Assembly: GCF_036321535.1 (NCBI RefSeq)
Contig: NC_087451.1
Coordinates: forward strand, 32,178,001 to 32,242,000
Length of the DNA: 64,000 bases
Origin: Camelus dromedarius
Lineage: Eukaryota
Direction: 5' to 3'
The notes beneath the pieces were generated by a model that was not told the DNA's origin, ran no database searches, and was given only the letters and a program-made list of their open reading frames with translations. Below, piece by piece: positions 57,401-61,931 of the stretch. Position 1 is the first letter of the stretch. Every line of letters starts with the position of its first letter. A program made the translations under genes and the position numbers.

Positions 57401-60400
57401 CAGGTCCTTTCTCTCTCTCTTCTCTTTCTGGGATCCCTATAATGCAAATATTAGAGTGCTTCATGTTGTCCCAGAGTTCTCTTAAACTATCCTCATTCCT
57501 TTTTATTCTTTTTTCTGTTCTGAAGTAGTGATTTCCACTAATCTGTCTTCTAGCTCACTGATCCATTCTTGTCTCATTTAGTCTATTCTTGATTCCTTCT
57601 AGTGAGTTATTCATTTCAGTGATTTTGTTCAACTCTGTTTGGGTATTCTTTATATTTTCCAACTCTTTGCTAAAAAACTTCACTCCGTGCATCTACTCTC
57701 CTCTTGATTTCTCTGAACATATTCACCATCATTACTTTAAACTCCTTCTCAGATAAATTGCTTATCTCCTCATCACTTATTTCTTGTGCCTTGGCCTGTG
57801 AGATATTCCTTTGCTGCCTTGTATCTGTCTTTCTTTCTATGTGTTTGTGGATTCCTTCCACAGGCTTTGGGATTGTTGTTTTCTTATTTCTAGTATCTGC
57901 CCCTGGTGGATGAGGATGGACTAGAGGCTTATGCAGGGTTCCTGGCAGGAGGAGCCGGGGCCTGCCCACTGCTGGGTGAAGCTTGGTCCTGGAACTCTCA
58001 TGGGTAGGGCCGTGTCTAGAGGACTTTGCGGCTCAGGAAGTCTGCTGTTGGGTGGGGCTGTGTTCCCACCCATTATGTTTGGCCTGAGGCTTCCCTACAG
58101 GCTGTTGCGTGGGGCTAGGTCTTGGTGCTAATGATCCAATCAAGATGTCAGCCTCCAGAAAGCTCATGTAGATTAACACTCCCAGAATGTCCACCACCAG
58201 CTTTTATGTCCCCTGAGTGAGCCACAGCTGTCCCCTACATCCCTAGAAGACCCTCCAAGTCTAGAAGGCAGGGCTGGCCCAGGTTCCTATGAAATCACTG
58301 CCTCTGCCTTTGGACCTGGTGCACGCGAGATTCCGTGTACACTTCCCAAGTGAATGGAGTCTCTGTTTCCACCAGTCCCCTGGGGCACCTGGCACCAAGC
58401 CCCGCTGGCCTTCAAAACCAGATGTCCTGGGGTCTCCTTCTCTTCCCAAGGCCGGAACCCGAGCTGGGGAGCCTGACGTGGGGCTTAGAGCTCTCACTCC
58501 TGTGGGAGGGCCTATGAGATTTAACAAATCTTCAGCTTGTGGGTTGCCCACCCAAGGGGTATGGGGCCCAACTGTATCGTGAGCATGCCCCTCCTACCCC
58601 TCCTGCTGTGGTTCCCTCTTACAATTTCCAGTTGCAGAAGATCTTTTTTGCTAGGTTCCAGTCTTTTCTCGATGGTTGTTTAGCATTCAGTTGTGGCTTC
58701 GTTCTATCCAAACATGAATTTTTAAGCACAAATGTTAATTGTTAGAGTTTACTCAACTCAGCAGCATATTTTGGAACTACCATTCACCTCCATCAACTGA
58801 AATATACTGGAAAAAAGAGTAAACTCACTTAATATTAGCCTATGTAAAACTCAATAAATAAGATGAACCTATAGCTGAAGTTTTATATAATCTCAAAGGA
58901 AATATTATTTTTATATTACTTTGTACTGACATTACCCCTAAAACAAAGAATCGAGAACTGACTACAAACAATTTTGCAACAGCGATAAAAAGGCTCCATA
59001 ATGATAAATTATAAACCACCAAACCTGTGGAAACTTCTCATATAACAGCTTCTCAAATAAGTTGTGAAAATGTTCAATGGCTTGTCTTGAATGTGATTTC
59101 AACAGATAAAAACAAACAAAAAAGAAAACCTTGAGTTTCCAACAATCGAGGACAAACTAGAAATGTCAATAAGCTTTCCCAGTAAGTAGGGAAAGAGGCC
59201 ATCCAGACATAGTCACAGAAGTTTCTCTTCTGAGCAATTGCCCCTTTGGCAGATTTTACAGTTCTGCCAAGCTTGAGATCTTCAATACCGACATATCCCA
59301 TGAATATTAACGACCATGAGGGACAATTATTAAATATAAAATTAAGAAAAACTACATTGCTTAGAAATTACATGAACTAGGAGGGGGTATAGCTCAAGTG
59401 GTAGAGTCCATGCTTAGCATGCATGAGGTCCTAGGTTCAATCCCCAGTACTTCCTCTAAAATAAATAACCTAATTACCTCTCCTATCCAAAACAACAACA
59501 AAAAACAAACAAAAAAAAATTACATGAACTGTACAGCATGTAATTTGCCAAAATTATAAGATTTTCATTAGCTCAATCTGCTCCTTATAAAATGAGAAAA
59601 ACTTCAACAACAACAAAAAAGTGGAAAACCTCCACATTTGGATAGCAAATGCGTCAAAGATTTGCAAGAAAATCTCTTCACACACATTTCCCAAGATTTT
59701 TCTCTTGAAAAGAAGGCGGCAAAACCAAGTAACAAGATTTCAGGGATTTTTTTCTGCTGCCTGACCACCGCCATCATGGGTCACATGCACACTCCCAGGA
59801 AAGGCCTGTCCCAGTCTGCTCTGCCGTACTGTCACAGCGTCCCCATCTGACTCAAGCTGATGTCTGATGATGTGAAGGAGCAGATCTACAAACTGGCTAA
59901 GATGGCCTGACTCCTTTACAAATTGGTGTAATCCTGAGAGATTCACATGGCGTTGCACAAGTATGTTTTGTGAGAGGCAATAAAGTCTTGAGGATTAAGT
60001 CCAAACGACTTGCTCCTGAGGATCTCTATCATTTATTTTTTTACTAATTTTTTTAAATGGACACAATTTTTAGAAACTTTATTTTCCGTCAACCTATTTC
60101 CATTTTAAGAGTTTGTGGAAAGAACAGCTTACAACCACTCCGTGGTTGNNNNNNNNNNNNNNNNNNNNNNNNNNNNNNNNNNNNNNNNNNNNNNNNNNNN
60201 NNNNNNNNNNNNNNNNNNNNNNNNNNNNNNNNNNNNNNNNNNNNNNNNNNNNNNNNNNNNNNNNNNNNNNNNNNNNNNNNNNNNNNNNNNNNNNNNNNNN
60301 NNNNNNNNNNNNNNNNNNNNNNTCCATTCACCCTGAAATTCGTCCTTGGTCACGGCCTTTTCAGCTGCAGCCTGCTCTTCCTTTTCAATCTCTTCAGGAT

Positions 60401-61931: not shown

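What the first reader, a model, noticed from the sequence alone, without database searches (positions are those of the whole stretch)
59744..61335. Nested ribosomal-protein retrocopies: full-length RPSA inserted inside an RPS13 pseudogene in NUP85 intron 2
Seen: the RPS13 reading frame stops at ...EDLYHL (60035) and resumes at IKKAVAV (61107). Between lies an antisense RPSA cDNA with 5'UTR, CDS, 3'UTR, AATAAA and A-tail. It is flanked by a perfect 12-bp duplication ctctatcattta (60024-60035 and 61095-61106) taken from the RPS13 CDS; on the insertion strand the site reads about TT|AAAT. The outer RPS13 copy has its own A-tail and flank repeat (ATTTCAG at 59737 and 61335). Established: L1 TPRT makes such copies and cuts TT|AAAA. 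Inference: two sequential L1-mediated events, RPS13 first (stops, frameshifts) and RPSA later (no lesion visible). Nested copies of two 40S-protein mRNAs give an ordered phylogenetic marker.
Basis: partly seen in the sequence, partly recalled or inferred. Interest (0 to 1): 0.72.

Follow-up and report, generated by a model that had tools for sequence, protein, structure and literature searches.

The report
RPSA retrocopy nested in RPS13 pseudogene
A dead reverse-transcribed copy of the ribosomal protein gene RPSA sits, in opposite orientation, exactly inside an older dead copy of the ribosomal protein gene RPS13 within an intron of NUP85; it is a clean textbook case of one retrocopy landing in another, real but ordinary.

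Summary
A full-length RPS13 processed pseudogene (+ strand, 59744-61334) is split between codons 91 and 92. The splitting element is a full-length RPSA cDNA copy on the - strand (60036-61094). It has a pyrimidine-rich 5' end, an 888-nt reading frame, AATAAA and an A-rich tail. A perfect 12-bp duplication of RPS13 codons 88-91 flanks it.

Both N runs keep the RPSA frame and residue numbering exactly, so they behave as true-length masks. I did not fill them.

RPS13 is much more decayed: 2 stops, at least 2 frameshifts, 2 in-frame deletions and 17% amino-acid change. RPSA shows no stop or frameshift in its visible 60%, but 6.4% amino-acid change at otherwise invariant residues. It is therefore also a decaying pseudogene, not lesion-free.

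The host intron lies between the NUP85 exons for residues 12-42 and 43-97 (- strand). RPSA is sense to NUP85 and RPS13 is antisense.

Two sequential L1-type retropositions, RPS13 first, is the best explanation (about 0.9).

Twenty runs from 10 studies of one organism hold 92-94% of the words of 58600-60148.

The phylogenetic-marker idea is plausible but untested. Interest is low.

The parts
59731..59743 (.). Outer target-site duplication, 5' copy (perfect core ATTTCAG at 59737-59743)
   Evidence: family D3: 13 nt matching 61329-61341 with two mismatches in the A-rich part..
59744..60035 (+). RPS13 processed pseudogene, 5' part. 5'UTR 59744-59775, ATG 59776, residues 1-91. Lesions: TGA at 59848-59850, -1 frameshift near 59899-59907, in-frame loss of residue 75 and of residues 83-85.
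   Evidence: frames. (residues 1-23, E 5e-6). (residues 44-91, E 1e-15, two gaps).
60024..60035 (.). Inner target-site duplication, left copy (RPS13 codons 88-91, LYHL)
   Evidence: family D8: perfect 12-mer. P about 1.3e-7 at a fixed place.
60036..61094 (-). Full-length RPSA processed pseudogene. 5'UTR 61094-61017 beginning CTTTTC, CDS 61016-60129 (888 nt counting N), 3'UTR with AATAAA at 60083-60078, A-rich tail about 60058-60036.
   Evidence: (uS2 residues 1-80). (residues 140-231). (C-terminal codons and TAA).
60149..60322 (.). Masked run (174 N) inside the RPSA CDS, corresponding to codons 232-290. Frame and length are preserved. Content not examined.
60601..60775 (.). Masked run (175 N) inside the RPSA CDS, corresponding to codons 81-139. 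Frame and length are preserved. Content not examined.
61095..61106 (.). Inner target-site duplication, right copy
   Evidence: family D8. One search aligns it with RPS13 residues 88-91.
61107..61334 (+). RPS13 processed pseudogene, 3' part. Residues 92-151, TAG at 61140-61142, frameshift near 61235-61243, stop 61286-61288, AATAAA 61305-61310, A9 tail 61327-61335.
   Evidence: (residues 86-102). (residues 104-136, E 2e-9)..
61329..61341 (.). Outer target-site duplication, 3' copy, merging with the A tail
   Evidence: family D3.
61839..61931 (-). NUP85 exon coding residues 12-42 (upstream flank of the host intron). AG acceptor and GT donor present.
   Evidence: E 2e-13 to NUP85 in 5a9q..
55433..55597 (-). 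NUP85 exon coding residues 43-97 (downstream flank of the host intron, which spans 55598-61838, 6241 nt)
   Evidence: E 3e-27 to NUP85..

Best explanation
There were two separate L1-type, target-primed retropositions at one spot.

First event: a full-length spliced RPS13 mRNA was copied into the NUP85 intron, antisense to NUP85. It left a short A tail and a 7-13 bp flank duplication, and then decayed.

Second event: later, the L1 endonuclease nicked the A/T-rich stretch of the dead RPS13 coding sequence at codons 91/92 (TTTA/AT on the + strand). A full-length RPSA mRNA was reverse-transcribed there from its poly(A) tail. The staggered second nick produced the 12-bp duplication.

The RPSA copy, sense to NUP85, has since drifted neutrally by about 3% and has no function.

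Shown: the anatomy, the order of events, and the difference in decay. Inferred: L1 as the enzyme, the ages, and neutrality.
For: - Exact RPS13 continuity at residues 91|92 once the insert and one repeat are removed.
- A perfect 12-bp duplication precisely at both ends of the insert, P about 1e-7.
- The insert runs from a CTTTTC pyrimidine start to AATAAA plus an A-rich tail, with no unexplained bases at either junction.
- The insert is colinear with the RPSA protein: residues 1-80, 140-231 and the C-terminus, in an 888-nt frame, so it has no introns.
- RPS13 shows 19 replacements in 111 aligned residues, 2 stops, at least 2 frameshifts and 2 deletions. RPSA shows 11 replacements in 172 residues and no visible stop or shift.
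- CpG observed/expected is 0.33 for RPS13 against 0.42 for RPSA.
- Twenty runs from 10 studies of one organism hold 92-94% of the sampled words of 58600-60148. That stretch spans the outer 5' junction and the inner tail junction.
- RP processed pseudogenes number 1,400-2,800 per mammalian genome (PMC2687790). RPSA has many in an artiodactyl (PMC2850357).
Against:
- The word shares do not show that the junction words themselves are among those held.
- No orthologous locus from another species could be examined, so the intermediate state (RPS13 alone) is inferred, not seen.
- The nick site matches the L1 consensus at only 4 of 6 positions.
- 349 of the 888 CDS bases are masked.
Confidence: 0.9

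Rival explanations
1. Assembly artefact: reads from separate RPS13 and RPSA pseudogenes (multicopy families) were joined wrongly.
For: Both families are multicopy (PMC2687790, PMC2850357). The read test could not be run.
Against: - A false join would not create a perfect 12-bp duplication of RPS13 codons 88-91 at both ends of a complete cDNA.
- It would not leave RPS13 seamless at residues 91|92.
- Contigs of 20 runs in 10 studies hold 92-94% of the words of a stretch that spans two of the four junctions.
Confidence: 0.03
2. One event rather than two. Either a template-switch chimera made during a single reverse transcription, or retroposition or duplication of a composite that was already nested at another locus.
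For: L1 reverse transcriptase is known to make chimeric retrocopies (own knowledge; compare bioRxiv 10.1101/2025.02.02.635956, listed, not read). The outer duplication and tail would look the same after copying of a composite.
Against: - Template-switch chimeras are head-to-tail in one orientation and have no internal duplication. Here the insert is inverted and has its own 12-bp duplication.
- A composite transcript would have to start at the RPS13 mRNA 5' end in a promoterless pseudogene.
- The two parts differ about 2.5-fold in decay.
Confidence: 0.03
3. The RPSA copy is a functional retrogene, or an expressed element that affects NUP85. It has an open 295-codon frame, is sense to NUP85 and carries its own AATAAA.
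For: - The frame is open in all visible codons and its total length is conserved.
- It is in sense orientation inside a transcribed intron.
- A sheep RPSA pseudogene also keeps a 295-aa frame, and 6 of the 11 sheep pseudogenes are transcribed (PMC2850357).
Against: - 11 replacements in 172 residues fall at positions identical in the vertebrate uS2 chains shown, e.g. Y156C, W175L, R63W.
- In simulation, an open visible frame has P about 0.54 and absence of indels P 0.03-0.24 under neutrality, so openness is not significant.
- There is no promoter of its own, and 40% of the frame is unseen.
Confidence: 0.03

Closest known systems
L1-mediated processed pseudogenes of ribosomal protein genes (e.g. 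the RPSA/LAMR1 pseudogene family; ovine RPSAP1-11, PMC2850357; RP pseudogene catalogues, PMC2687790)
   Same: Intronless full-length cDNA copies with AATAAA, an A tail and flank duplications, at an A/T-rich target. They are intronic or intergenic, decay neutrally, and occasionally keep the 295-aa frame.
   Different: Nothing in kind. The particular feature is that the target of the second insertion was itself an RP pseudogene, and that both copies are full length.
Nested retroelement insertions used as ordered presence/absence markers (SINE/LINE-in-LINE nesting)
   Same: The inner element interrupts the outer one, with a duplication made of outer-element sequence. This gives an unambiguous relative order.
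   Different: Here both layers are mRNA retrocopies rather than transposable elements. This is rarer only because retrocopies occupy little of the genome.
Chimeric retrocopies from L1 reverse-transcriptase template switching (U6-L1, mRNA-mRNA chimeras)
   Same: Two different cellular RNAs end up adjacent in one locus through L1 machinery.
   Different: Chimeras are co-oriented, fused end to end, and share one pair of duplications. This locus has an inverted insert with its own internal duplication, so it is not a chimera.

Membership tests
Processed pseudogene (L1-mediated retrocopy): RPSA copy | Colinear with the spliced mRNA, no introns | tested here: met
   Visible pieces equal uS2 residues 1-80 and 140-231, and the C-terminus falls at codons 291-295. 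The frame is exactly 888 nt including the masks. The parental gene has introns in sheep (PMC2850357).
Processed pseudogene (L1-mediated retrocopy): RPSA copy | Poly(A) signal followed by an A-rich tail at the 3' end | tested here: met
   AATAAA at 60083-60078 (- strand). A-rich 23 nt ending in A7 directly abutting the duplication.
Processed pseudogene (L1-mediated retrocopy): RPSA copy | Target-site duplication flanking the insert | tested here: met
   Perfect 12 bp at 60024-60035 and 61095-61106. P about 1.3e-7 at a fixed place.
Processed pseudogene (L1-mediated retrocopy): RPSA copy | Nick site resembling the L1 endonuclease consensus TTTT/AA | tested here: inconclusive
   The nicked (+) strand reads TTTA/AT, which matches 4 of 6 positions. 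It is A/T-rich and compatible but not canonical (the consensus is from own knowledge).
Processed pseudogene (L1-mediated retrocopy): RPS13 copy | Intronless cDNA with tail, flank duplication and disabling lesions | tested here: met
   Residues 1-23, 44-91, 92-102 and 104-136 are colinear. AATAAA at 61305-61310 and an A9 tail. A 13-nt flank repeat with 2 mismatches. 2 stops, at least 2 frameshifts and 2 deletions.
Nested (sequential) insertion | The outer element is seamless after removal of the insert and one repeat copy, and the repeat is made of outer-element sequence | tested here: met
   RPS13 residues 91|92 are adjacent. The repeat equals codons 88-91.
Nested (sequential) insertion | The inner element is younger than the outer one | tested here: met
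   Amino-acid change is 6.4% (11/172) against 17% (19/111). All stops and frameshifts are in the outer copy. This is protein-level only, because the parental mRNAs were not available.
Nested (sequential) insertion | The intermediate state (outer element alone) exists in a related lineage | not testable with these tools
   No mammalian genome collection was on hand. The run search returned one organism only.
Template-switch chimeric retrocopy | Same orientation, end-to-end fusion, a single pair of duplications | tested here: not met
   The insert is inverted and has its own internal 12-bp duplication.
Functional RPSA retrogene | Intact frame under purifying selection, and expressed | tested here: inconclusive
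   The frame is open where visible. However, there are 11 replacements at conserved residues, and openness is not significant under neutrality. 40% is masked, and expression was not tested.

The most novel reading that the evidence does not exclude
The RPSA copy keeps a complete 295-codon frame, sense-oriented inside a transcribed NUP85 intron, with its own polyadenylation signal. On this reading it is used: either as a lineage-specific RPSA-like retrogene or as a premature polyadenylation or exonisation site that shapes NUP85 transcripts in camels.
Probability: 0.03. Interest if true: 0.4.

Novelty: new member of a known kind. Interest (0 to 1): 0.12.

Why it matters
Its main value is as a clean teaching example and a small annotation point. 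Two full-length retrocopies of 40S-subunit mRNAs are nested with all hallmarks intact, so the order of events can be read directly from the sequence.

If the intermediate state survives in a related lineage, the locus gives a homoplasy-poor two-step presence/absence character for camelid or cetartiodactyl branches. Those branches are already well resolved.

It also shows that the coding sequence of a dead RPS13 copy offers a usable A/T-rich target for L1. There is no evidence of function.

Tried and rejected
- **Read laying on 59300-61800 with four runs from four studies.**
- **Earlier findings by place and by words.** Nothing on this locus. only told me that other notes call the genome camel.
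- It was one base out of frame, which was my slip, so its blank means nothing. It was repeated correctly.
- **NUP85 exon 1 (residues 1-11).** Looked for in 61932-64000 on the - strand and not found. The numbering 'intron 2' therefore rests on homology.
- **Template-switch chimera.** Rejected on orientation and the internal duplication.
- **Retrogene reading.** Tested by simulation. The open frame is not significant.
- **Nucleotide-level dating.** Not possible, because neither parental mRNA was available.
- **Masked runs.** I did not fill or look up the N runs. I searched the visible RPSA pieces separately, so that no alignment showed residues opposite the masks.
- **Metagenome pattern scan.** I did not scan metagenome contigs for the junction or for the empty site. 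The empty-site pattern is generic RPS13 sequence and could only return unrelated, possibly human, material.

Full report
**What is there.** Reading 59500-61600 and translating it shows two ribosomal-protein cDNA copies, one inside the other.

**The outer RPS13 copy.** It lies on the + strand.
- The 5'UTR starts at 59744 and the ATG is at 59776.
- The reading frame can be followed through residues 1-23 (E 5e-6 to solved uS15/RPS13 chains) and residues 44-91 (E 1e-15). It ends with EDLYHL at 60018-60035.
- It resumes at 61107 with IKKAVAV. One search aligns 61089-61139 (query residues 4-20 of the stretch searched, 61080-61139) with residues 86-102, and one search aligns 61143-61241 with residues 104-136.
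- It ends with TAA at 61286-61288, AATAAA at 61305-61310 and an A9 run at 61327-61335.
- The break therefore falls exactly between residues 91 and 92. The LYHL (codons 88-91) seen on both sides is the duplication.

**The inner RPSA copy.** It occupies 60036-61094 on the - strand.
- It begins with a pyrimidine-rich CTTTTC, as expected of the 5' end of a ribosomal-protein mRNA (own knowledge).
- It has a 78-nt 5'UTR, ATG at 61016 and TAA at 60131-60129.
- Its 3'UTR carries AATAAA at 60083-60078.
- An A-rich tail of about 23 nt ends in A7 and abuts the duplication.
- No base at either junction is left unexplained.

**The N runs (asked to be tested first).** Counting each N as one base, the ORF listing returns a single 295-codon frame, 888 nt with the stop.
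- I searched the visible pieces separately, so that nothing opposite the masks was displayed.
- 60777-61016 aligns with uS2/RPSA residues 1-80 (E 2e-44).
- 60324-60599 aligns with residues 140-231 (E 1e-53).
- These are exactly the codon numbers predicted if the 175-N run stands for 175 bases.
- The last visible codons are numbers 291-295 plus the stop, which fits the 174-N run and a 295-residue protein.
- Both runs therefore keep frame and length and behave as masks of true length, not as gaps of unknown size.
- Their content was not examined, so a stop codon inside them cannot be excluded.

**The duplications.**
- The repeat finder (D8) gives 60024-60035 equal to 61095-61106, 12 of 12. This is the only perfect 12-mer repeat in 59600-61500.
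- The chance of that 12-mer at one fixed place is about 1.3e-7. A 12-mer repeat anywhere in the region appears in 6% of shuffles. The significance therefore comes from its position exactly at both ends of the insert.
- With a 12-bp duplication the nicked (+) strand reads TTTA/AT, which is AT|TAAA on the insert strand. This is A/T-rich and close to the L1 consensus TTTT/AA (own knowledge), matching 4 of 6 positions.
It extends to 13 nt with two mismatches where it merges with the A tail (D3).

**Relative age.** Against solved vertebrate chains:
- The RPS13 copy has 19 replacements in 111 aligned residues (17%). It also has a TGA at 59848-59850, a TAG at 61140-61142, a -1 frameshift near 59899-59907, another frameshift near 61235-61243, and in-frame losses of residue 75 and of residues 83-85.
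- The RPSA copy has 11 replacements in 172 aligned residues (6.4%): H24R, R63W, I77V, S78A, Y156C, V171G, W175L, R180W, R184C, R186H and E225D. Probably the last residue is also changed. There is no stop or frameshift in the visible 60%.
- CpG observed/expected is 0.33 for RPS13 and 0.42 for RPSA, against 0.07-0.22 in the flanking intron.
- The outer copy is therefore clearly older, and the inner one is itself no longer fresh.
- A mutation simulation puts 12 replacements at about 3.2% nucleotide change. It gives P about 0.54 for no stop in the visible codons and P 0.03-0.24 for no indel in 888 nt. The open frame is therefore not evidence of constraint.
- With generic mammalian neutral rates (own knowledge), this suggests very roughly 15-30 million years for RPSA and two to three times that for RPS13. 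These are inferences inflated by CpG decay, not measurements.

**Host gene.**
- The two flanking exons were then confirmed by reference against solved NUP85 chains. 61839-61931 (- strand) equals residues 12-42 (E 2e-13). 55433-55597 (- strand) equals residues 43-97 (E 3e-27).
- Both exons have AG/GT boundaries. The intron is 6241 nt.
- RPSA is sense to NUP85 and RPS13 is antisense.
- Exon 1 (residues 1-11) was not found in the window. 'Intron 2' is therefore correct only if those residues lie in one upstream exon.

**Mechanism.** The anatomy fits two sequential target-primed reverse transcriptions by L1 machinery, RPS13 first.
- An insert cannot wrap around an older one. The duplication is made of RPS13 sequence, and RPS13 is seamless without the insert.
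- A template-switch chimera is excluded by the inverted orientation and the internal duplication.
- A mis-assembly would not build a perfect duplication around a complete cDNA.

**Independent material.**
- The run search found 20 runs from 10 studies, all of one coded organism. Each holds 92-94% of the sampled words of 58600-60148, a stretch that spans the outer 5' junction and the inner tail junction.
- This indicates that the sequence of that stretch, and by inference the nest, is widespread in the species. It does not prove that the junction words are among those held.
- The plateau near 0.93 may reflect words removed by a filter, but that is a guess.
- I worked beside those places afterwards and sent none of their letters to any search tool.

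**Comparison with what is known.**
- Mammalian genomes hold 1,400-2,800 ribosomal-protein pseudogenes. Most are processed and lineage-specific (PMC2687790).
- Sheep have 11 RPSA processed pseudogenes at 74-99% identity. Three are in introns, one keeps the 295-aa frame, and presence/absence against cow has already been used to date them (PMC2850357).
- Nesting of one retroposed sequence in another is routine for transposable elements. For mRNA retrocopies it is rarer only because they cover roughly a few ten-thousandths of the genome, so a handful of such nests per genome is expected by chance (my estimate).
- I found no paper describing this particular nest, but the kind is known.

**Verdict.** The feature is real, tidy and ordinary. 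The only open points are read-level contiguity, the intermediate state in relatives, and the small chance that the sense-oriented open frame or its poly(A) signal is used.

Noticed in passing
window 49182-52635 (- strand): Further NUP85 coding exons were recognised by motif. They hold residues around [16 protein letters not shown] (52420-52473), MELIWNLCE (50615-50641) and LLHLLDWV (49356-49379). The window therefore covers the 5' part of NUP85 on the - strand.
   Followed up: partly
window 16172-16303, 43795-43984, 47032-47165, 55902-56054: There are four more N runs of 132-190 bases elsewhere in the window. One of them (55902-56054) lies in the same NUP85 intron. They were not examined.
   Followed up: no
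window 59500-59620: An A-rich tract (59500-59519) and a CAA/A-rich run (about 59600-59620) lie upstream of the RPS13 copy. They may be the tail of another retroposed element in the same intron.
   Followed up: no
window 61815-61836 (- strand): A run of about 15 T follows directly after the GT donor of the NUP85 exon for residues 12-42.
   Followed up: no
window 58600-60148: All 20 holder runs sit at the same 0.92-0.94 share of words, and none reaches 1.0. The same few words seem to be missing everywhere. This could be a filter on human-like words or fixed differences from the assembled individual.
   Followed up: no
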